A stretch of DNA of 64,000 nucleotides from Podarcis muralis (taxonomy: Eukaryota): the NCBI RefSeq assembly GCF_964188315.1, contig NC_135670.1, positions 18,042,001-18,106,000 of the forward strand, written 5' to 3'. A program made the position numbers and the translations under genes. The notes under the pieces were generated by a model, which had not been told where the DNA came from, searched no databases, and saw nothing but the letters and a program-made list of their open reading frames with translations. Positions within the stretch are counted from its first letter, which is position 1. Every line of letters starts with the position of its first letter. Positions 29,600 to 39,849 of the stretch are shown here, piece by piece.

Positions 29600-32500
29600 A
29601 GTGAGAGTCACACATGAGGAACATCAGCCGTGTTGAGGAAGCCAACATTTGGTGGGTGGGAGAGGATTCCACACTCTGGATGATGATTTATGGCCGAGAT
29701 GTCCGTCTCACTGTAGCCTCTGTGGTCTGGGGGGTAGTTATGGAAACTTTTTGGATCAGGCTCGCCTACCTAAATCTAGGGAGCACAATAGCGTGTTTGG
29801 GGGTGACAAAGCATCTTGAATCAAGAATTCCGTGTTTGTGGGTCAGTACTTGTACAAAAGAACCACCCGTAACCCTGCAATCTCCCTGCCTTGTCTTCCA
29901 ATACAGATACGAATCTATAGTGAATGCAACAGTAGCCACAATCCTGCCAAAGTTAATCACAACTAGCCGTCCTGTACCCTCTTAGCTGGGAGTGAAGTCC
30001 TTTGAACTCTGGTAGGGCTTCTTCATCCAAATAGGCCTAGGATCACAGTGCAAGTTCCATTGCAGGTTATTGTGACTAAGGCCACAATCGCACCATACAT
30101 TTGATAGCACTTTAAACAGTCACAGCTTCCCCAAAAGGATTCTGGAAGCTGTAGTTTATTAAGCTTGCTGACAGTTGTTAGGAGGCCCCTATTCCCCTCA
30201 CAGAGCTACAATTCCCTTCACAAGGAACTTTGGGAATTGTAGCTCTGGGGGGGAAAGAGGTGTACCCTAACAAATCTCAGCACCTTTAACAAACTACAGC
30301 TGACAGAATTCTTTGGGGAGGGAAAGTCACAACCATTTAAAGTGGTGCCATTGCACTTTAAATGTATGGTGTTAACATGTGCTAACTTAAATCCTGTTGG
30401 CTTTCTGTGAGGCTTAGCATGTGTACGCAGGAGTAATCCCTGTTGAATTCAGTGGCTTTTACTTCATGGTAACAGGGCTTCGCTGCATGTGATATCTGCT
30501 GCTTCAAACTTTAAAAAAAATTACACTTCTATCCCCACAACCTCCCTCTAAGGAGACAAGGTCAGTGCTCATTTGTGGATGAGCTTGAGTTTCCCTCATC
30601 AAACTACAACTCTCTGTCTCAGCCATTGCCAACATGGTGCCCTCCAGATGTTTTGGGCTATGGCCATAACTGGGAGTTGTAGTCTAAAACTCCCAGAGGG
30701 CGCCAGGTTGAGAGAGGCTGCTATAGAGCTCAGCCTTCCTCATATGCTGGCTGGATCTGACAGGAATTGTAGCCCAAAACAGCCAGAGGGTGCCAGATTG
30801 ACAAGGCTTGCTGCTGCTCTTGTAGGGCCAATAAATCTGTGCCAGAATTTCCACACAATGCCCTGGGCATGGTGCCAATGTGGCTGAATGACTAGGTAGG
30901 TAGGAAGAAGGGCGTTTTGCAGGGCAGGGAATTCGGTTATTATGAAGACTCCCCTGACACTTCCTAGTCTCCTAATACCAGAAATCCCCCAACAGAAGTG
31001 ATTAACTGACAGAACTGGAAGCCAAAAGGAGGAGGTGATGGGTGATGGCTTGAAGAAGGGGTTATACAACTTCATGGAGGAGAACTCCATCAGTGGCTAT
31101 TATCAGTGGCTAAATTGATCCTCCATAGGCAGAGGCAATCCACCTGTCAATACAGGTTGCTGGGGGGAAGAAGCAGGAGGAAGACCTGATTTGGGGGGTG
31201 GGGTGGCTTCTAGCTTGGCTAGCGTGTCAAGGAGGCTGCAAGGATCCCTGATGGGGGTCTTTTTAGATTCTTATGTTATATTCCAAAGTCCCTGTCAGCT
31301 CAATACCTTCATTAGACAAAGCAAAATATCATGGAATAGTATGCAAGTTTTTGAGTTCTCCTTATCTCTTCATCTGGCTCGATGAAGAGTTCTGTGAAAC
31401 TTAAAAACTTGCACATTATTTTGTGACATTTTGGTTGGCCTAATAAGGGCACTGCCCTAGTAGGGAATTTAGGTCCCCCCCCCCCACTCTTGTTATTTCT
31501 TTTGTTACACATTCACAATGCACTTGGACTCCCTGCTTAGACTTCTTTCTGTGGCTGTGACTCCTTTTGTGTTCAGCCTCCATACCGAAACTTGAATGTC
31601 TGGATCACCAAGCTGAGATCCTTCAAAATTTACCCCATCCAAAAGACACAGCCAGACCTTTGTGGAATTGGAAATTCGTCAGTATATTGTGTGTGTACAT
31701 TTATACATATATGTATTGTGTGTGTATATATAGCAAGAGACACAAAGAATATATTTTGTAAATAAATCGCTATGGACTGGGCATTTTTAAATTTATTACT
31801 GTGCTTAATGTAGCGAAACAAGTAGGGGTGTGTACATTGGGAAACATTCCATACATAAAAGAAGCAAACTGCTTATTTCAGAGACACCTAAGATTCCTGT
31901 TGTGCATCCTGAACAAACTACAGTTCCCAGAATTCTTTGGGGGAAGCCATGATGGTTTAAAGTGGTATCATAGCGGATTAATGTTGTGAATGCAGCCCTA
32001 CTTAAACTTTGGTTGCATTTGGGGATTTGACACAGAGCATAATTCTTTTTCATGGGGGGGGGGCAATGGAGGGGAGCACCACCTTTGCATTCAGAAGGTC
32101 ACAGGTTCAATCCCTGCCGGCATCTCTAGTTAGGGCTGGACTAAGACTCCATATCTCAAACCCTGGGTAGCCACTGCCAGTCACCGTCAACAGTACTGGA
32201 TTAGATGGGTCAGCAGTCTGGATTCTCAGTCAACAGGAAGCAGTTGCTCGCAACCTCAAATCTCTTAACCACAAATCTCTTCCTGTTAGAAATGTGCTCA
32301 GGGTTGGGCTTTGGTGAGTCTCCAACAGATCTCTGTGATTTGAATGGAGTACGGGAGAGGAGAGATGGTTTCTATAGTGGGTCTAAATCATTTAGAATCA
32401 GAACTGTAGAGTTGGAAGGGATCCCAAGGGCCATTAGTCTCAACCCCCTGCAATGCAGGAATCTTAACTAGAGTCACTGACTGACAGCCATCCAACCTTT

Positions 32501-32715
32501 GCTTAAAAACCTCCAAAGAGTCCACAACCTCCCGAGGAGCACCCCGTGCTAACATGCACAGCAGCATACAGCAACATATCCTATGCACACAGCAACATCT
32601 CTGCTCTACCATGATATGGCATGTTTTTTTATTTATACACCACCCAAAGCCCCTCAAAGTGTGATCCACATGAATCCATGTGAATATGAAATAAATACAC
32701 AAAGGTACGATGCAC

Positions 32716-32718
<3 letters not shown>

Positions 32719-32746
<28 letters not shown>

Positions 32747-32758
32747 GTCAGTCAGTCA
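32719..32758. repeat. (TCAA)n/(TCAG)n tetranucleotide microsatellite
   Basis: Directly visible. Confidence 0.9.
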
Positions 32759-33606
32759 TATCCAACCATGCACAGGAATTCTGCACAGGGTTGTTGTGAG
32801 GATAAAATGGGGAGGAGGAGAGCTACATATGTCACTTGAGCTCCTTGCTTCATGCAACTTGGGCTGTTCATGGTAGAGCGAGATTTGAACCACGGCTTTC
32901 CTAATTTCTCCCCCACATCTCTTAATGTTGACACACTTACTTAGTAAGAACCTTGCAGGCAGAGATCTGTTGTTTTCCGATCTGGTATAGCCAAGTGATT
33001 TAAAATAACAATATTAAGGAAGTTTCTCCTTCAAATGCAGCTTCAGCCATGACATAGGGGGCATCCTTGCCTCGTCCCCTTCTCTTTCTTACATTTTTCC
33101 TGTAATGGCATTATTCCTGTAATGGCATACAATCAGGTTTGCAGTTTGATCTGTATAAACTGCCTTAATCCCTTTTATGAATATGACTCCTAATTCCATT
33201 TTTTTCTAATAACTTAATCATAAATGACAAAAAAATAAAATAAATTCAATAGGGACTAATCTTAGGTTTTGCAGATCGGCAGAAAGAACCAGCTGCACCA
33301 ATATAACATGAGGGATACCTGGTTTGCTAGTAGTACATGGGAAAAGGATCTAGGGGTCTTAGTGGACCACAAGCTTAACATGAGTCAACCTGAGAGTGAT
33401 GCAGCAGCAAAAAATGCTAATGCTGTTTTAGGCTTCAACAACAGAAAAGTGTCCAGATCAATGGAAGACAATAACACAATGAAATTCAAAACAGTAACAA
33501 TTTATTGCATGTTTATTCAAAATCCATTAAAAACTATTTAGTTTAAGTAATGCAAGAAAATCGACCAGCTTGAGCCAGTGACACCAGAGAGAGCCATTTT
33601 CAAATA

Positions 33607-33825
33607 CAGTGGTACCTCGTGTTGCATAACCTTCAGGTTATGGAATCTTCAGGTTACGGCTGTAGCAAACCCAGAAGTTTATACTTCCAGGTTTCGCCGC
33701 ACGCATGCGCAGAAGCACTCTATCACGCTGCGCATGTGTGCAGAAGTGGCGCCTCTAGTTATGGATTTTTCAGGGTGCACACAGCACCCCGAAACAAATT
33801 AAATTCGTAACCAGAGGTACCACTG
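33607..33825. mobile_element. Tc1/mariner-superfamily MITE
   Basis: TA-CAGTGGTACCTC...GAGGTACCACTG-TA. Confidence 0.88.
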
Positions 33826-34227
33826 TAACTCAAGGGCTCTCACATGGAAGATGCAGCAAGCTTTTTTCTCCTGCTCTGGATGGTAGGACTCGAACCAATG
33901 GCTTCAGAAACAACAAAGGAGATTCCAACTAAACATTGTTCAACAGAGGAATGGACTCCCCTGGAAGGTGATGGACTCTCCTTCCTTGCATGTTTTAAAG
34001 CAGATATTAGATGACCATCTGTCATGGATCCTTCCTTCCTTCCTTCCTTGTTCTGCCCAATCTCAGTCCATATTTCATGGCTGGTTAAATCATCTACCCC
34101 CCCTCCTGATTCTCGGTGCCTCTTCTTCTGCCAATCTTTGGCCAATTGGGATGTCCAAATAGAGCCAGCAATTCCTTCAGGGAGGAAAATCATAACTCTT
34201 TGATGATGTCATCATTTGGCTGGTAGA

Positions 34228-34883
34228 TGTTATGTATTGGGTTTAACACAAGGTGCGTTCTAACCAATCATATAAGCGCTGGTAGACGAACGTTCTAATG
34301 GCAAGTAAGCGCATGGACTTTCAACTGTCAACTGTCAGTTCATGCTCGGCATTATTATTCTGTTGTCCAGTCAGTTCAGTTCTTGTTTTCCTATGAGTGA
34401 GCTGTTGTCACTGACAAATGTTGAATAAACATAGTCGAGGAACTTATACTGCCTTGGGCTTCTGACTTTTCCCGAACACTGGTGACAAGGATGGGGTTGA
34501 TGAACTCCCGCCGCCTGCTGCCTCGCAGTAAGCGCGACCTCACCGCCACGCTGGACTTAGCAAACAGTCCCAGAAACGAGACTGCGCCTGCTGCATCTTC
34601 GCAACCACCCACAATCACACAAGCAACTGCTCCAGGTCCAAGGATGGCCGCCAGTCATAGTCGGCCGCCACCGGACTTGGATATGAGCCATCCTGCAGAA
34701 TGGCCGCAGTGGCTCCGCCGAATAAGGAGCTATGTCCGACTACAAGGCTTCACTAGGGAGGCAGACAAGGTGGATGTGCTACTGACGGTGCTGGGAAGTT
34801 CTGCCATCACTCTACTGGAAGATCTGGTGGCACCCAGGGACATAGAGGCATGCACTTTCAATGAGCTGACACAGGCTATGACA
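34228..34883 (+). mobile_element. Gypsy/Ty3 LTR retrotransposon remnant: 5' LTR (34228-34478), PBS (34480-34497), truncated gag
   Basis: LTR runs TGTTATGTATT...AATAAA(34424)...GAACA. PBS TGGTGACAAGGATGGG matches the tRNA-Ser(GCT) 3' end with two CpG-type changes. gag-like MAASHSRPPPDLDMSHPAEWPQWLRRIRSY...KVDVLLTVLG...LEDLVAP...TFNEL. Flanked by AGA(T) direct repeats. Confidence 0.85.
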
Positions 34884-36330
34884 AGATAGGAAAGGCTTGC
34901 CAGGCAGGGAGCAGGTCCTGCAGGACTCCCAGCAGGAAGACCTGGGAGATGTGTCTTGGGCAAACAAGGGACAAGGGAATTTGCTGTCCCCAAGGTGTGG
35001 GGCTTATCTTCTTTCAGATTTTGCCAGAAACAAGCCAGCTCTGGGTGAATTACTATGTTTTGCAGAGAAAAGAAAAATCTGGGTCCCCACCCTGGATGGG
35101 TGCAAAAGAGCACAGAAGCAGCCCCATGCCAGGAAGGATGGGTCTCACTATGGCTTGGGCCCAATCTCTTGCCCCAGAGGACCTCCTTGGACCCCACAGC
35201 CTCCTAGGCAGAGGTGGAAGGGCAGCACCAGGAAAGGGGGCAGAAATACCCTCTGGCCTCATTCTGGCTCCCAGGGACACACACCACATCTTCTGCATTA
35301 AAAGTCGCTGGGAGATGTGCTCTTGGGGGGATGGAAGCAACCAAAGAAATGAATACAGGAAGGCAAGATACTTACTCTGAGGTGGGGGAAACAGCTAGCA
35401 GCAGAGAAATGCTGCTGGCTGCTAGTTTCCTTTCCGCCTCACTTCCCCAAAGGGCGTAAAATCGGAGGTCCTGTGGGAGGAAAGGGCGTCTCAGACTCAG
35501 GGGCCAGTCTGGGCCAAAGCGGCCCTCCGCTGCCCTCATCACAATGTCCCTGGCACTCCCGAACCATGAGGGTTGCCCCTTTTGGTCTTGGGCCAAATTG
35601 GGGGCCAAACGGGACAGGGGACTCTGTGCCCCAGAAATGAAACATTCTGTTGGGTAAGGGATGGGGGGCAACCCTAAACCCACTCCTGATGCCATCAGGA
35701 CACTTACAGTGAGCAGCTGGAGGAGGGTGCCAGCATTGGGGGCCTCCAGAAGGAGACCCCCCCCCAGTAGGTTCAGGAAGTGCCTCTTCCATTCCTGCGA
35801 GAAAAGTGAGAAGAGAGGTTGAGTGCTGGGTTAAATCTTGGAAGGGTGTGAGAAGAAGACAGAGATGTGCAAAGGGAAGTCAAAGCAGAGGACATACCTC
35901 TTTGTCCTCCTCCTTTTCTGCGCCCCCAAGAACAGCCTCCATTGTCCTATGCAGGATAGCACTGACCATATCGCAGCTGAAATGGGGTCTCATGAAGGTG
36001 GAGAAAGGAGAGGGGTTAGACGCTGCCTCCTCCCTTACCCCCTTCTGCCTGCTCTTGCCTCCCCAAAGCCCCTCTCTGCCCCTCCCTCCCCATGGGGGTC
36101 CCTCACGCCACCCCTCACTCACCATAATGGCTTTGGCCGTCTCCTGCTTGGAGCACTTCAGGGTTCGGAGCCCCCTGAGCCAAGCTGCCTGGCAGTTCTG
36201 GATGACCTCCAGGAGGTATAGCTGATCCTCCTCCAGCAGCTGAAATGCAAAAGTCAGGCTGTCACTTCCTTGAGGGCTCCTCTGCATCCGAGAATGCAGA
36301 GTGGGGGGCAAAGAGCCCAGGCAGCGTGGG

Positions 36331-38579
36331 CAGGGCCACATTTAGATGAAGAGAGGCCCTAGGCTACTCCACTTGTGAGGCCCCAGCCAACCCCCCACCC
36401 TCACAACTAAAAGAAAAAATTCAGAGTGAACTGTACCAACTTGCACAAGAACTCAATAAAGTTCTGATTTCTGAAGGGTTTTGCTGACCTTGTGAAAATG
36501 ACCTAGAGGATGGGTCAAAAAATGCAGCATAAACACAAATTCCAGTTCTTCCATTTTCTGCAAAAGATTGTTAGCTTGGAGCCTGGTTCCCCCTTCCCAT
36601 TAACATCAGAGTACAAATGACTGAGGGTATCAGTGATAGCACTATAACTTTTCAAAACAGCTTTCGTGGCTTTTGAATGTGCTGTGTGTCCCACAAATAT
36701 CTGTCTGACAAATATTTAGGCACATTAGACTGTGGTGGCAAAAATGATTTTAAGAACTGCCCATCTCTTTGTGGAGGATGAAAAGAAGGAATAAATTTCG
36801 TTGATAGTGCCAAAACAGTTCACTGCATCAAGGCAGCAATCCACAGCTGAACGACCCACCAGATTTATAGTGACCTGCCGGCTGGTTGATGCATGAAAGC
36901 AGTGACTGGTCTTAACTTCATTATCATAGCATTTTTGAGACTCTGTCTCTTGTGCTTGCTAGCACCACTTTCAAATCTCTTACTCATGCTTAGATTAGAA
37001 TCTAAAAAACAAAAATAAAAATTACTCTTCAACTGGATAAACTTGGGCTTCTGTCACTCTTCAGTAGCTGCCACCACTTGCTGACTTCCCTATGTCTTTC
37101 TTGAGGGGCAGAGAGACCCCTCTGGCTGACTCCTGGGGTTTGGAGATGAAAACCCCTAACTTTGGGTTTCTCCTGGAGGGTTGGCACCTGCACATTTTGG
37201 GGCTTTTTCCCTCCCAGGACCCTTCTTAAGGCACTGGTAGCGGGCAGAGCGGGGGAGACTCTGTGGTCACAGCACCAGACTGGGCTTTTAAACAAAGAAC
37301 AAATATTTTCTTGACTATCTGCAAGTAGCAGGATTTTAAACACAAAAGGCCCTTTAAATTAACCATAGAAAAGGAAAACACCACCGGGCACAAATAAAAT
37401 AGGACAAAACGCAGTTCCTCCAACCCTATACTTATTTTCCCTCTGGATGAGGTCCAGTTACCAACCTGCAGCCTAGCCTCCTGCCTTCTACAGGTAGTTC
37501 TGGATCCCTCTGAGGATCCCTTCCCACTGCTGGCTTCCCTGATCCCCAAGGCCTCTCTCTGCCTGTGGGCAACCTGCAGTGCATGTTGCAGGTACCAACA
37601 GGGCTCTGTGAAGTGTGAAAGATAGAGCTTGCTTGCCTGGTCTATCTGCCTCAGCTGGCCCCCCACTCGTACTCTCCCACTGATTAAAGTGCAGCACGTA
37701 CCACTACTGACCTGACCCTTGAGCTGGGGAAGGTTGCTGACTCTGGGCCTACGGGCTCTGGATTCTGAGATGGAAAATTCTGGGGGGCGAGGACACTCAA
37801 CAGCCCAGCTCGTCGGGGTGCAAGTCCCTGCGGGTCTCTGCGGTTAGCAGAAGAAGGAAGTTCCAGCCAAATACAGGAGCAAAACAGGGGTCAATAGACC
37901 ACAATCTTTATTGTTGTGCAACAGGTCCCCACACAGAGTAAGAACCCCAAACATGGGTTACAAGCTCTTTGAAAACCTTCCCTCCCTACCAGAATACATG
38001 TCCAGAACCATCATTGAGACATCACTGATACATCATGTCACCAGGAAGGAGGGGAGTCGTGAGGTTACCCAAGTTCATCAACTTGCCCCGTGTCATGAAT
38101 GAGCCAGCCGCCAGGGAAGGTTTGCAGGCAGCTCCCAGTGAAGGAAGTAGCCAGGAAGAAAGAGAGTTAACTGCCAGACAAGATGAGCATAGCCCAGTGC
38201 CAACTCCCCCACCCTTAGGACTGGCAGTTGATAAGAGAAGGACGCAGGCCTGGCCAGGACGCCGATGGTCCGGCCAAGACAAAGAAGGCCTGGTCTGGAC
38301 ACCGAAAGCCTGGTCAGGACAAAGAAGGCCTGGCCAGGATGTAGAAGGCCTGGTCTGGATGCTGAAGGCCTGGTCAGGACGAAGAAGGCCAGGCCAGGAC
38401 GTAGAAGGCCTGGTCAGGACGAAGAAGGCCTGGTCAGGACGAAGAAGGCCAGGCCAGGACGTAGAAGGCCTGGTCAGGATGAAGAAGGCCTGGCCAGGAC
38501 AAAGAAGGCCTGGTGAGGCCCCCTAGATTTAGAGGCCCTAGGCTTCAGACTACTTAGCCTATACATAAATCCAGCACTG
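36331..38579 (-). mobile_element. Internally deleted hAT DNA transposon with transposase remnants
   Basis: Ends CAGGGCCACATTTA / TAAATCCAGCACTG; 8-bp TSD AGCGTGGG / AGCGGGGG. Minus-strand remnants MSKRFESGASKHKRQ (ATG at 36987) and EIYSFFSSSTKRWAVLK...QANNLLQKMEELEFVFMLHF...KVSKTLQ (36430-36800). Confidence 0.8.
38241..38514 (+). repeat. 20-bp minisatellite (consensus GAAGAAGGCCTGGTCAGGAC), ~13.7 units
   Basis: Three units per 60-bp line are directly visible; variants alternate with a ~60-bp higher-order period. Confidence 0.93.
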
Positions 38580-39849
38580 AGCGGGGGGGGGGGGGGGAAG
38601 TCTGAGGGATCCACTCCCTGCTCTTGTTTTATCCAATACTCACCGCTACAGAAGGGATGTGGAACCCCAGCACACCTGCAAAGAGAAGGACATGGGGACA
38701 GGTGAGTTCGTCCCTGAGCCCCTGGCAAGGCTATTCCAAGAGTTTTCTCCTGGATTCCAAGTCCTACTACAGGGGAGGGACACCCCAGGCCTTGGGGGCC
38801 AATCCTGGCCTCCTGCCCCCAGAACATGGCTCCCCAGGGAAGGTGCCCCTCCCGCTGACAACTGCCCCCCCCGCCTTGCCCCGCAGCCCCCCCTGCTTCC
38901 TCCATTGGACCCCACAAAACGGGTGGTCGCTGGCAGAGTTGGGTTTCCAGACACTGGCTCAGATGGACCTTGGGTTGGATCCAGCCGTCTGGCTCTGTGC
39001 ATCTTTTGACTAGCTGCCCCCCTAGCCCATTCCTGCCCTCCTCTGTCCCAAAAAGGAGGACCACTTGCTCACCTGACACCATGGGCTGCTCTGGACCTTG
39101 CAGGGCTGTTGCTGCGGCTGATCAGGCATCTTGAACACCTTAACTTAGAAGAGAGGAGCAGAGAGAGCAACTCAGAAGGTGGCAGCCCCAATTCTTGGGG
39201 GGCGTTTGTGTGTGAGGAGGGGCGTCTGGCCCAATTCTTTCCATCTCTCTGCAGTTTAGTGACCTGAAAGGGCATCGCCAGAGCGGGAAAGAGGCAGCCC
39301 AGAGCATGAAGGGCTGGCAGAGAGACAAAGGAGGCCCCAAGTGCTATGGGTTCAAGAGCTCCAGCCCAATGGAAAGACAAGCATTGCCAACTGTTAAAAG
39401 GGCTGCTCTGCCTCGTCTTAGGACAGCCCTGCCCTTCCTGGAGAGGGAGGAGACCCATAGGAGGGTCCTCCAAGCATCAAGGTGTCCCAGAAGAGGAGCA
39501 GGACATGAGGAAGGTGTTGGAATCTTCCATGGAGCCAGAGAGACCCCCAGGAAGGGGGAGAAGTCCGATGTCGTAGGGCCGTTGGAGAGAGGCAAAATGG
39601 AGCCAGGCAGAGGTGTAGCAGTTGGAGGGCTGGACTAGGAGGACCTGGGAGAGCAGGGTTCGAATCCCCACTCAGCCATGAAGCTCCCTGGTGGACCTTG
39701 GGCCAGCCTAGCCTACTTTGCAGGGCTGCTGTGAAGATAACAATTGGTGGCAGGGAGAACCATGAAGGCCACCTTGAGCTCCTGGGAGGAAAGTGGTCTA
39801 TGAATGTCCCAGTAAATGTAAATGATGAGAGGGGAGAGAAAAGGGGAAG

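What the first reader, a model, noticed from the sequence alone, without database searches (positions are those of the whole stretch)
31312..39143. Hidden, unidentified ~13-exon gene, now pseudogenised, between RAB25 and the RAB11-like gene
Seen: minus-strand exons with strong splice sites and mostly short introns (67-237 bp in the core). Spliced reading: MVSG|VLGFHIPSVA|LLEEDQLYLLEVIQNCQAAWLRGLRTLKCSKQETAKAIM|(fs)DMVSAILHRTMEAVLGGAEKEEDKE|EWKRHFLNLLGGGLLLEAPNAGTLLQLLT|DLRFYALWGSEAERKLAASSISLLLAVSPTSE|RLWGPRRSSGARDWAQAI|NIVIHPELACFWQNLKE|VFLLGVLQDLLPAWQAFPI^YQPNDDIIKEL*FSSLKELLALFGHPNWPKIGRRRGTENQEG|GKNVRKRRGRGKDAPYVMAEAAFEGETSLILLF*ITWLYQIGKQQISACKVLT|KDLLETHQSPTLSTFLTGRDLWLRDL|RSGCVFWM|GFTELFIEPDEEIRRTQKLAYYSMIFCFV*, about 350 aa. 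Removing the Gypsy (^) rejoins the exon exactly in frame; removing the hAT restores a 147-bp intron. Lesions: 1-nt phase mismatch at 36123/35976; acceptor AG>AA at 35060; donor GATAAGC at 35008; TGA at 34190 (a plausible CGA>TGA change); TAA at 33000. I recognise no family, and human has no protein-coding gene here that I know of. Inference: a Leu/Trp-rich, probably helical protein lost in this lineage and possibly intact in relatives. The last three exons and the start codon are tentative; the true 5' end may lie further right.
Basis: partly seen in the sequence, partly recalled or inferred. Interest (0 to 1): 0.85.

Follow-up and report, generated by a model that had tools for sequence, protein, structure and literature searches.

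The report
Decaying copy of lacertid HEAT-repeat gene
The exon chain between RAB25 and the RAB11-like gene is a real gene, already listed in RefSeq as uncharacterised LOC114586420 of the wall lizard, and it is a broken copy of a small helical-repeat protein family so far seen only in lacertid lizards.

Summary
They match about 35 "uncharacterised" proteins, all from Podarcis, Lacerta and Zootoca. Their junctions appear as spliced GT..AG joints in contigs of two related species. The RefSeq product of Podarcis muralis LOC114586420 isoform X2 is letter-for-letter the window's exons 1-6 with intron 3 retained, so the gene is not hidden.

The canonical family protein has about 215-230 residues and ends ...EEL followed by a stop. 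The TGA at 34190 is therefore the natural stop.

Compared with the syntenic orthologues in L. agilis and P. lilfordi, this copy is a pseudogene:
- The next acceptor is lost.
- Exon 6 has a 10-nt deletion.
- Both splice sites of exon 8 and the last acceptor are mutated.
- The N-terminal exon has an 8-nt deletion.
- An LTR-like insertion lies in the last intron.

The family folds as HEAT-like repeats. Its nearest relatives are the central repeats of MROH (maestro heat-like repeat) proteins, so an MROH origin is probable but not proven. Interest is modest.

The parts
39072..39144 (-). N-terminal coding exon of the family (the ...RCLRRL...EQP... exon). It carries an 8-nt deletion near 39106/39105 that shifts the frame. 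The acceptor is AG>AA at 39146-39145, with an AG available 1 nt downstream. RefSeq starts its model at the internal ATG at 39082.
   Evidence: DNA alignment with the P. lilfordi and L. agilis orthologues and two paralogues. P0028 N-terminus tblastn hit at 39275-39099.
38644..38674 (-). Short exon 2 (VLGFHIPSVA).
   Evidence: Identical in P0001. Spliced joint 36239>38644 with GT..AG ends in contigs of organisms B and C.
37716..37836 (-). Alternative exon inside the enlarged intron 2. The L. agilis model uses it (EFSISESK...).
   Evidence: tblastn of P0003 at 37792-37709. Joint 37837>38644 in X6.
36123..36239 (-). Exon 3, 39 codons, intact.
   Evidence: A 111-nt contig with no mismatches in X1, and joints on both sides in X6 and X14.
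36040..36077 (-). Scar of a ~284-bp deletion that removed family exon 4a (68 nt) and its flanks. The junction is at about 36058/36057.
   Evidence: Pairwise and three-way alignments with L001 and L002. Exon 4a is present in L. agilis (L001 15612-15679) and, 21 nt shorter, in P. lilfordi.
35898..35997 (-). Exon 4b. Its true acceptor is lost (AC instead of AG at 35999-35998, shared with P. lilfordi).
   Evidence: Joint 35974>36122 in X14.
35708..35794 (-). Exon 5, intact, with one extra GGG codon in a G-run.
   Evidence: Joint 35469>35707 in X6 and X14.
35376..35470 (-). Exon 6 with a 10-nt deletion at about 35391/35390. The ancestral exon is 105 nt and reads ...AVSRRFPHLR. The frameshift leads to TAA at 35374-35372 if the intron is retained.
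   Evidence: X6 carries the 10 nt behind 35387, and the X14 transcript contains them.
35008..35059 (-). Family exon 8 (17 codons + 1 nt). Both splice sites are mutated: the acceptor is AA at 35061-35060 and the donor is AT at 35007-35006.
   Evidence: 35007 is G in X6, and the X14 transcript joins exon 6 directly to this exon.
34226..34884 (-). 659-bp LTR-like insertion in the last intron, with loss of about 85 bp of intron including the pyrimidine tract. It is shared with P. lilfordi and absent in L. agilis. Its class was not verified.
34190..34215 (-). Last coding exon (DDDIIKEL then stop). The acceptor is AG>AA at 34217-34216. TGA at 34192-34190 is the natural stop.
   Evidence: Family C-termini end ...EEL, EDL or EDI. 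The X14 transcript ends the ORF at the same TGA.

Best explanation
The stretch is the Podarcis muralis locus LOC114586420. It is an unprocessed, decaying copy of a small multi-exon gene that belongs to a multi-copy family found so far only in Lacertidae.

Shown: intact family members encode proteins of about 215-230 residues. These have a basic Cys/Arg-rich N-terminus, a core of about nine helices, and an acidic C-terminus ending ...EEL.

Inferred: the core is a HEAT-like alpha-solenoid, most probably descended from the central repeats of an MROH (maestro heat-like repeat) gene. Such proteins act as protein-binding scaffolds. No partner or tissue of expression is known.

Shown: the copy next to RAB25 has disabling changes, acquired stepwise.
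- Shared with P. lilfordi: the 8-nt deletion in the N-terminal exon, loss of the exon-4b acceptor, and the LTR-like insertion in the last intron.
- Found only in this genome: deletion of exon 4a, the 10-nt deletion in exon 6, AG>AA and GT>AT at exon 8, and AG>AA at the last exon.

It can no longer make the family protein. It is still transcribed at a low level. Inferred: the RefSeq 189-aa product, which retains intron 3 and stops in the exon-6 donor, is best read as an annotation of a transcribed pseudogene.
For: Identity and family:
- P0001 is identical to the window's spliced exons.
- about 35 homologues, all lacertid, with E-values down to 1e-121 for the profile.
- the orthologous loci in L. 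agilis and P. lilfordi are flanked by the same two Rab genes.

Lesions:
- each lesion is seen in base-level alignments.

Transcripts:
- spliced GT..AG joints at exon pairs 2/3, 3/4, 4/5, 5/6, 6/8 and 8/last in contigs of two related species. The 10 nt and the GT donor are present in organism B. There are almost no RNA reads in this species' raw run X22.

Rate of change:
- exon divergence (3.6-7.5%) is barely below intron divergence (4.8-9.7%) at this locus.
- dN/dS is 0.25-0.47 between paralogues, which suggests the family itself is constrained.

Fold:
- all-helical models, pLDDT 66-71.
- the top Foldseek hits are MROH2B, MROH2A, MROH7 and MROH2B-like or Maestro-like entries (probability 0.99-1.0, TM 0.44-0.56).
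- Pfam HEAT_Maestro_2, E = 3.7e-4, hit by 4 of 36 members.
Against: - RefSeq calls the locus protein-coding.
- Two 152-153-codon stretches stay open across introns 3 and 5.
- dN/dS among the three orthologues is 0.36-0.65 rather than 1, but it rests on only 6-17 substitutions per class.
- The MROH link is below Pfam's gathering score. The Foldseek E-values are weak (0.04-0.16). PDB and ESM Atlas searches return only generic helical repeats.
- Some contigs laid at 85% likeness may come from paralogues rather than orthologues.
- Restriction to Lacertidae rests on annotated proteins. Unannotated copies in other squamates could not be searched.
Confidence: 0.85

Rival explanations
1. The copy is still a working gene. 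It would make a shortened or remodelled protein, for example the RefSeq 189-aa isoform with intron 3 retained, or a ~125-aa ORF starting at the ATG at 35969.
For: - Open reading persists across exon 3, intron 3 and exon 4, and across exon 5, intron 5 and exon 6.
- There are low-level reads on the strand expected for a minus-strand RNA, and an exon-3 contig in this species.
- Orthologue dN/dS is below 1.
- The RefSeq model exists.
Against: - Any such product lacks exon 4a, part of 4b and the whole conserved C-terminus, or replaces them with intron-encoded residues.
- Five splice sites or exons are damaged.
- Exons diverge almost as fast as introns.
- Expression in the raw RNA run is near zero.
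Confidence: 0.1
2. It is a unitary gene of about 13 exons and 350 residues. It would extend past 34190 to 31315 and include exons 7 and 9a. It would be broken by two stops, one frameshift and a Gypsy insertion inside an exon.
For: - The segments have splice-like borders and open frames.
- The 9a sequence is conserved and appears in one paralogue model, P0029.
Against: - All intact family proteins end at the homologue of the 34190 stop.
- No family protein matches exon 7 or any post-stop segment.
- The exon-7 donor is absent in L. agilis.
- The X14 transcript joins exon 6 to exon 8 and exon 8 to the last exon directly.
- In P0029, 9a is plain read-through of the intron.
Confidence: 0.03
3. The chain is chance ORFs or a non-coding RNA with no protein-coding ancestry.
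For: - The individual exons have no Pfam hit.
- The segments are short and lie in a GC-rich region.
Against: There is highly significant protein-level similarity to dozens of paralogues at other loci, with conserved exon borders and dN/dS well below 1.
Confidence: 0.02

Closest known systems
RefSeq LOC114586420 (Podarcis muralis, 'uncharacterized protein', isoform X2, 189 aa) and its orthologues, L. agilis LOC117039112 and P. lilfordi P0039
   Same: It is the same locus. The RefSeq protein is identical to the window translation. The orthologues lie between the same two Rab genes.
   Different: RefSeq treats it as coding. Comparison shows that this product retains an intron and stops inside a splice donor after a 10-nt deletion. 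The L. agilis copy keeps exons 3-9 and all their splice sites.
Lacertid paralogues such as LOC114587072 (P0031), LOC128412407 (P0026) and LOC132591967 (P0028)
   Same: Same exon order and borders. Protein identity is 45-65% over the exons that BLAST aligns in both, exons 3-6 and, for three paralogues, exon 8. Same C-terminal ...EEL stop.
   Different: The paralogues are compact (introns 1-2 about 100-150 bp) and intact. Some sit in tandem arrays, with a period of about 11.3 kb in Zootoca. The window copy has enlarged introns and many lesions.
MROH family (maestro heat-like repeat proteins MROH2A, 2B and 7; Pfam PF23210 HEAT_Maestro_2)
   Same: Helical-repeat fold. The best structural matches are to MROH central repeats (MROH2A 819-984, MROH2B 734-916, MROH7 398-593). 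There is a weak HMM match to positions 557-637 of PF23210.
   Different: MROH proteins have 1100-1700 residues. This family has about 220 residues, with its own N- and C-terminal tails. The Pfam score is below the family threshold. Sequence identity in structural alignments is 15-22%.

Membership tests
Lacertid LOC114586420 / LOC114587072-type uncharacterised protein family | Significant protein similarity across the core exons | tested here: met
   Single-sequence E-values down to 3e-71. Profile E-values down to 1e-121, with P0001 at 9e-67. tblastn hits of paralogues on the window.
Lacertid LOC114586420 / LOC114587072-type uncharacterised protein family | Shared exon-intron structure (exon order, phases, borders) | tested here: met
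   Exon borders coincide in L001, L002, L003, L004 and L005. Spliced joints fall at the same positions.
Lacertid LOC114586420 / LOC114587072-type uncharacterised protein family | Uninterrupted ORF from the ...RCLRRL... exon to ...EEL and the stop (a functional member) | tested here: not met
   8-nt and 10-nt deletions, exon 4a deleted, and the exon-4b acceptor, both exon-8 splice sites and the last acceptor mutated.
MROH (maestro heat-like repeat) family | Pfam HEAT_Maestro-type domain above the gathering score | tested here: not met
   Best score is 19.3 bits against a cut-off of 27 (P0008). 4 of 36 members match at E <= 1. The window's own product has no hit.
MROH (maestro heat-like repeat) family | HEAT-like alpha-solenoid fold closest to MROH repeats | tested here: inconclusive
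   MROH entries top both AlphaFold DB searches (probability 0.99-1.0, TM 0.44-0.56), but E-values are 0.04-0.16. PDB and Atlas give only generic helical repeats. Model pLDDT is 66-71.
MROH (maestro heat-like repeat) family | Large multi-domain architecture (more than 1000 residues) | tested here: not met
   Family members have 165-356 residues.
Unprocessed pseudogene | Introns retained, plus disabling lesions relative to orthologues and paralogues | tested here: met
Unprocessed pseudogene | Neutral rate of change in the former coding sequence | tested here: inconclusive
   Exon versus intron divergence is 3.6 vs 4.8%, 7.5 vs 9.7% and 6.8 vs 8.0%. dN/dS is 0.36-0.65 on very few substitutions.

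The most novel reading that the evidence does not exclude
The family itself may be the interesting object. It would be a young gene family, restricted to Lacertidae, of ~220-residue HEAT-repeat proteins born from an internal fragment of an MROH gene. It has spread to at least five or six chromosomes, with tandem arrays. It is held under purifying selection (dN/dS 0.25-0.47) while individual copies, like this one, are being lost. No paper was found that names any member.
Probability: 0.5. Interest if true: 0.45.

Novelty: new member of a known kind. Interest (0 to 1): 0.3.

Why it matters
For annotation, a RefSeq "protein-coding" locus of the wall lizard is better labelled a transcribed pseudogene. 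The true exon structure of its family is now defined, including an exon that is missing here.

For biology, the finding points to an unstudied, lineage-restricted family of small HEAT-repeat proteins with birth-and-death dynamics in lacertids. It is a usable case for studying how fragments of large repeat proteins become independent genes. It does not open a long-standing question, and the window copy itself is ordinary gene decay.

Tried and rejected
- Pfam on single exons found nothing. Pfam on ORFs in the presumed hAT region found nothing, so the hAT label is unverified.
- Self-BLAST of the LTR-like insert and of intron 2 found no other copy in the window. The Gypsy label is unverified.
- The repeat finder reported only a 20-nt tandem array.
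- A phmmer search of 1.84 billion representatives with the exon5-intron5-exon6 stretch found only lacertid family members and no MROH.
- ESM Atlas features gave only generic HEAT/ARM clusters.
- PDB Foldseek gave only designed helical repeats.
- Literature searches for the LOC identifiers and for MROH in lizards or squamates found nothing relevant.
- A first codon map was contaminated by intron read-through. It was redone on clean blocks.
- The spliced ~130-220-aa reconstruction was not submitted to external searches because it has no reference. The two long stop-free stretches, window:35883-36341:- and window:35375-35830:-, were used instead.
- The idea that the ORF simply starts at the ATG at 35969 with no lesion was rejected once the paralogues showed that upstream exons are coding.
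Full report
**Context.** The window is lizard DNA. RAB25 exons lie on the plus strand at about 24.4-28.6 kb. A RAB11-type gene lies on the plus strand at 54.1-58.6 kb. The finding lies between them on the minus strand.

**Observation.** Most have AG/GT borders. Single exons have no Pfam match. Two long stop-free stretches exist. One runs across exon 3, intron 3 and exon 4 (36341-35883, 153 codons). The other runs across exon 5, intron 5 and exon 6 (35830-35375, 152 codons). They gave referenced queries for the database searches.

**Identity.**
- The first stretch hit 16 proteins and the family profile hit 35. All come from Podarcis muralis, P. raffonei, P. lilfordi, Lacerta agilis or Zootoca vivipara. 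All are named uncharacterised or hypothetical, and none has a precomputed Pfam domain.
- An exhaustive phmmer run with the second stretch against 1.84 billion representatives found only the same family.
- P0001 is RefSeq LOC114586420 isoform X2 of P. muralis. It equals, letter for letter, the translation of 39082-39072 + 38674-38644 + 36239-35898 (intron 3 retained) + 35794-35708 + 35470-35372.
- The window is therefore P. muralis or an identical sequence, and the gene is already modelled.

**Canonical structure.** Intact paralogues (for example P0031, P0026, P0028, P0009) have about 215-230 residues. Their exons, in order:
- an exon with a basic ...RCLRRL...VAP..EQP... motif
- a 10-codon exon
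- exon 3 (39 codons)
- exon 4a (DILGPLEHFRDRPL...LQL)
- exon 4b (.MRP.FS.DM.SAILHRT...)
- exon 5
- exon 6 (35 codons, ending ...R.FP.LR)
- exon 8 (17 codons)
- a last exon, DDIIIE.L, followed by the stop

In the paralogues, introns 1-2 are only about 100-150 bp. Zootoca carries a tandem array with a period of about 11.3 kb.

**Orthologues.** L. agilis LOC117039112 (locus L001) and P. lilfordi P0039 (locus L002) are each flanked by the same two Rab genes. They are collinear with the window. Base-level comparison gives these lesions:

| Lesion | Window position | Seen in |
|---|---|---|
| 8-nt deletion in the N-terminal exon | near 39106 | window and P. lilfordi; L. agilis has an independent 10-nt deletion in the same exon |
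| ~284-bp deletion removing exon 4a (68 nt) | about 36058 | window only; P. lilfordi keeps a version 21 nt shorter |
| Exon 4b acceptor AG>AC | 35999-35998 | window and P. lilfordi |
| 10-nt deletion in exon 6 | about 35391 | window only |
| Exon 8 acceptor AG>AA and donor GT>AT | 35060 and 35007 | window only |
| Last-exon acceptor AG>AA | 34216 | window only |
| 659-bp LTR-like insertion with ~85 bp of the last intron lost | 34884-34226 | window and P. lilfordi; absent in L. agilis |

- TGA at 34192-34190 is the conserved stop.

**What is not real.**
- No family protein matches exon 7 or any segment after the stop.
- The exon-7 donor is absent in L. agilis. Exon 7 (55 nt) merely restores the frame broken by the 10-nt deletion.
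- 9a appears only as intron read-through in one paralogue model.

**RNA.**
- Contigs of two related organisms (X6, X14) show GT..AG joints at exons 2/3, 3/4 (cryptic site), 4/5, 5/6, 6/8 and 8/last. The 6/8 joint skips exon 7 and the 8/last joint skips 9a.
- Organism B has the 10 nt and the G at 35007.
- In the window's own species, the raw RNA run X22 has a mean depth of 0-2.3 over the gene. The X1 contigs are mostly unspliced at a depth of about 10, apart from an exact exon-3 contig.
- Some laid contigs probably come from paralogues. Two versions of the exon-5 start occur in X14. An X1 contig joins a paralogue-type exon-3 end to exon 6.

**Constraint.**
- Paralogue pairs give dN/dS of 0.25-0.47 over exons 3-6.
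- At this locus, exons are barely more conserved than introns.
- dN/dS among the three orthologues is 0.36-0.65 on 6-17 substitutions per class. This is compatible with relaxation but not decisive.

**Fold and origin.**
- AlphaFold2 models of P0009 and P0031 are all-helical, with about nine or ten helices (pLDDT 66 and 71).
- Foldseek against Swiss-Prot models ranks MROH2B, MROH2A and MROH7 as its top five hits, followed by plant SGR6. The cluster library returns several MROH2B-like or Maestro-like HEAT entries.
- Pfam HEAT_Maestro_2 is hit weakly by 4 of 36 members, best E = 3.7e-4 and below the threshold.
- PDB and Atlas give generic helical repeats.
- I read this as probable (about 0.65-0.75) descent from an MROH fragment.

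**Verdict.** This is a real, already annotated, lineage-restricted gene copy that is decaying. The extended 13-exon model does not.

Noticed in passing
window 38216-38555: A 20-nt tandem repeat array (about 17 units) lies inside the enlarged intron 2. The homologous arrays in L. agilis and P. lilfordi differ in length.
   Followed up: partly
window 33300-34100: A highly abundant repeat just 3' of the gene. Depth is in the hundreds to thousands in all four runs, with many loose ends at 33604-33640 and 33789-33827. It looks like an expressed interspersed element.
   Followed up: no
It is conserved in L. agilis and in paralogue introns. It may be a relic of a duplicated exon.
   Followed up: partly
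L003 2025-3720, 13361-15050, 24210-24330: Zootoca vivipara carries a tandem array of family copies with a period of about 11.3 kb. Each has an upstream coding exon about 3.3 kb away.
   Followed up: partly
window 39106; L001 about 10890: Independent frameshifting deletions hit the same N-terminal exon in Podarcis (8 nt) and L. agilis (10 nt). The RAB25-adjacent copy may therefore be impaired in both lineages.
   Followed up: partly
window 35768-35760: A G-run in exon 5 encodes GGG here and in P0001. It encodes GG in the older P. muralis model P0015 and in both orthologues. This is either a length polymorphism or an assembly difference.
   Followed up: no
window 24.4-28.6 kb and 54.1-58.6 kb: RAB25 and a RAB11-type gene flank the locus on the plus strand. 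Two Rab genes of 215 and 217 residues flank the orthologues in L. agilis and P. lilfordi in the same way.
   Followed up: partly
window 36127 / 35471 (X1 contig): A contig from this species joins a paralogue-type exon-3 end (...AIL) directly to exon 6, in frame, skipping exons 4a-5. It is probably an isoform of a paralogue.
   Followed up: no
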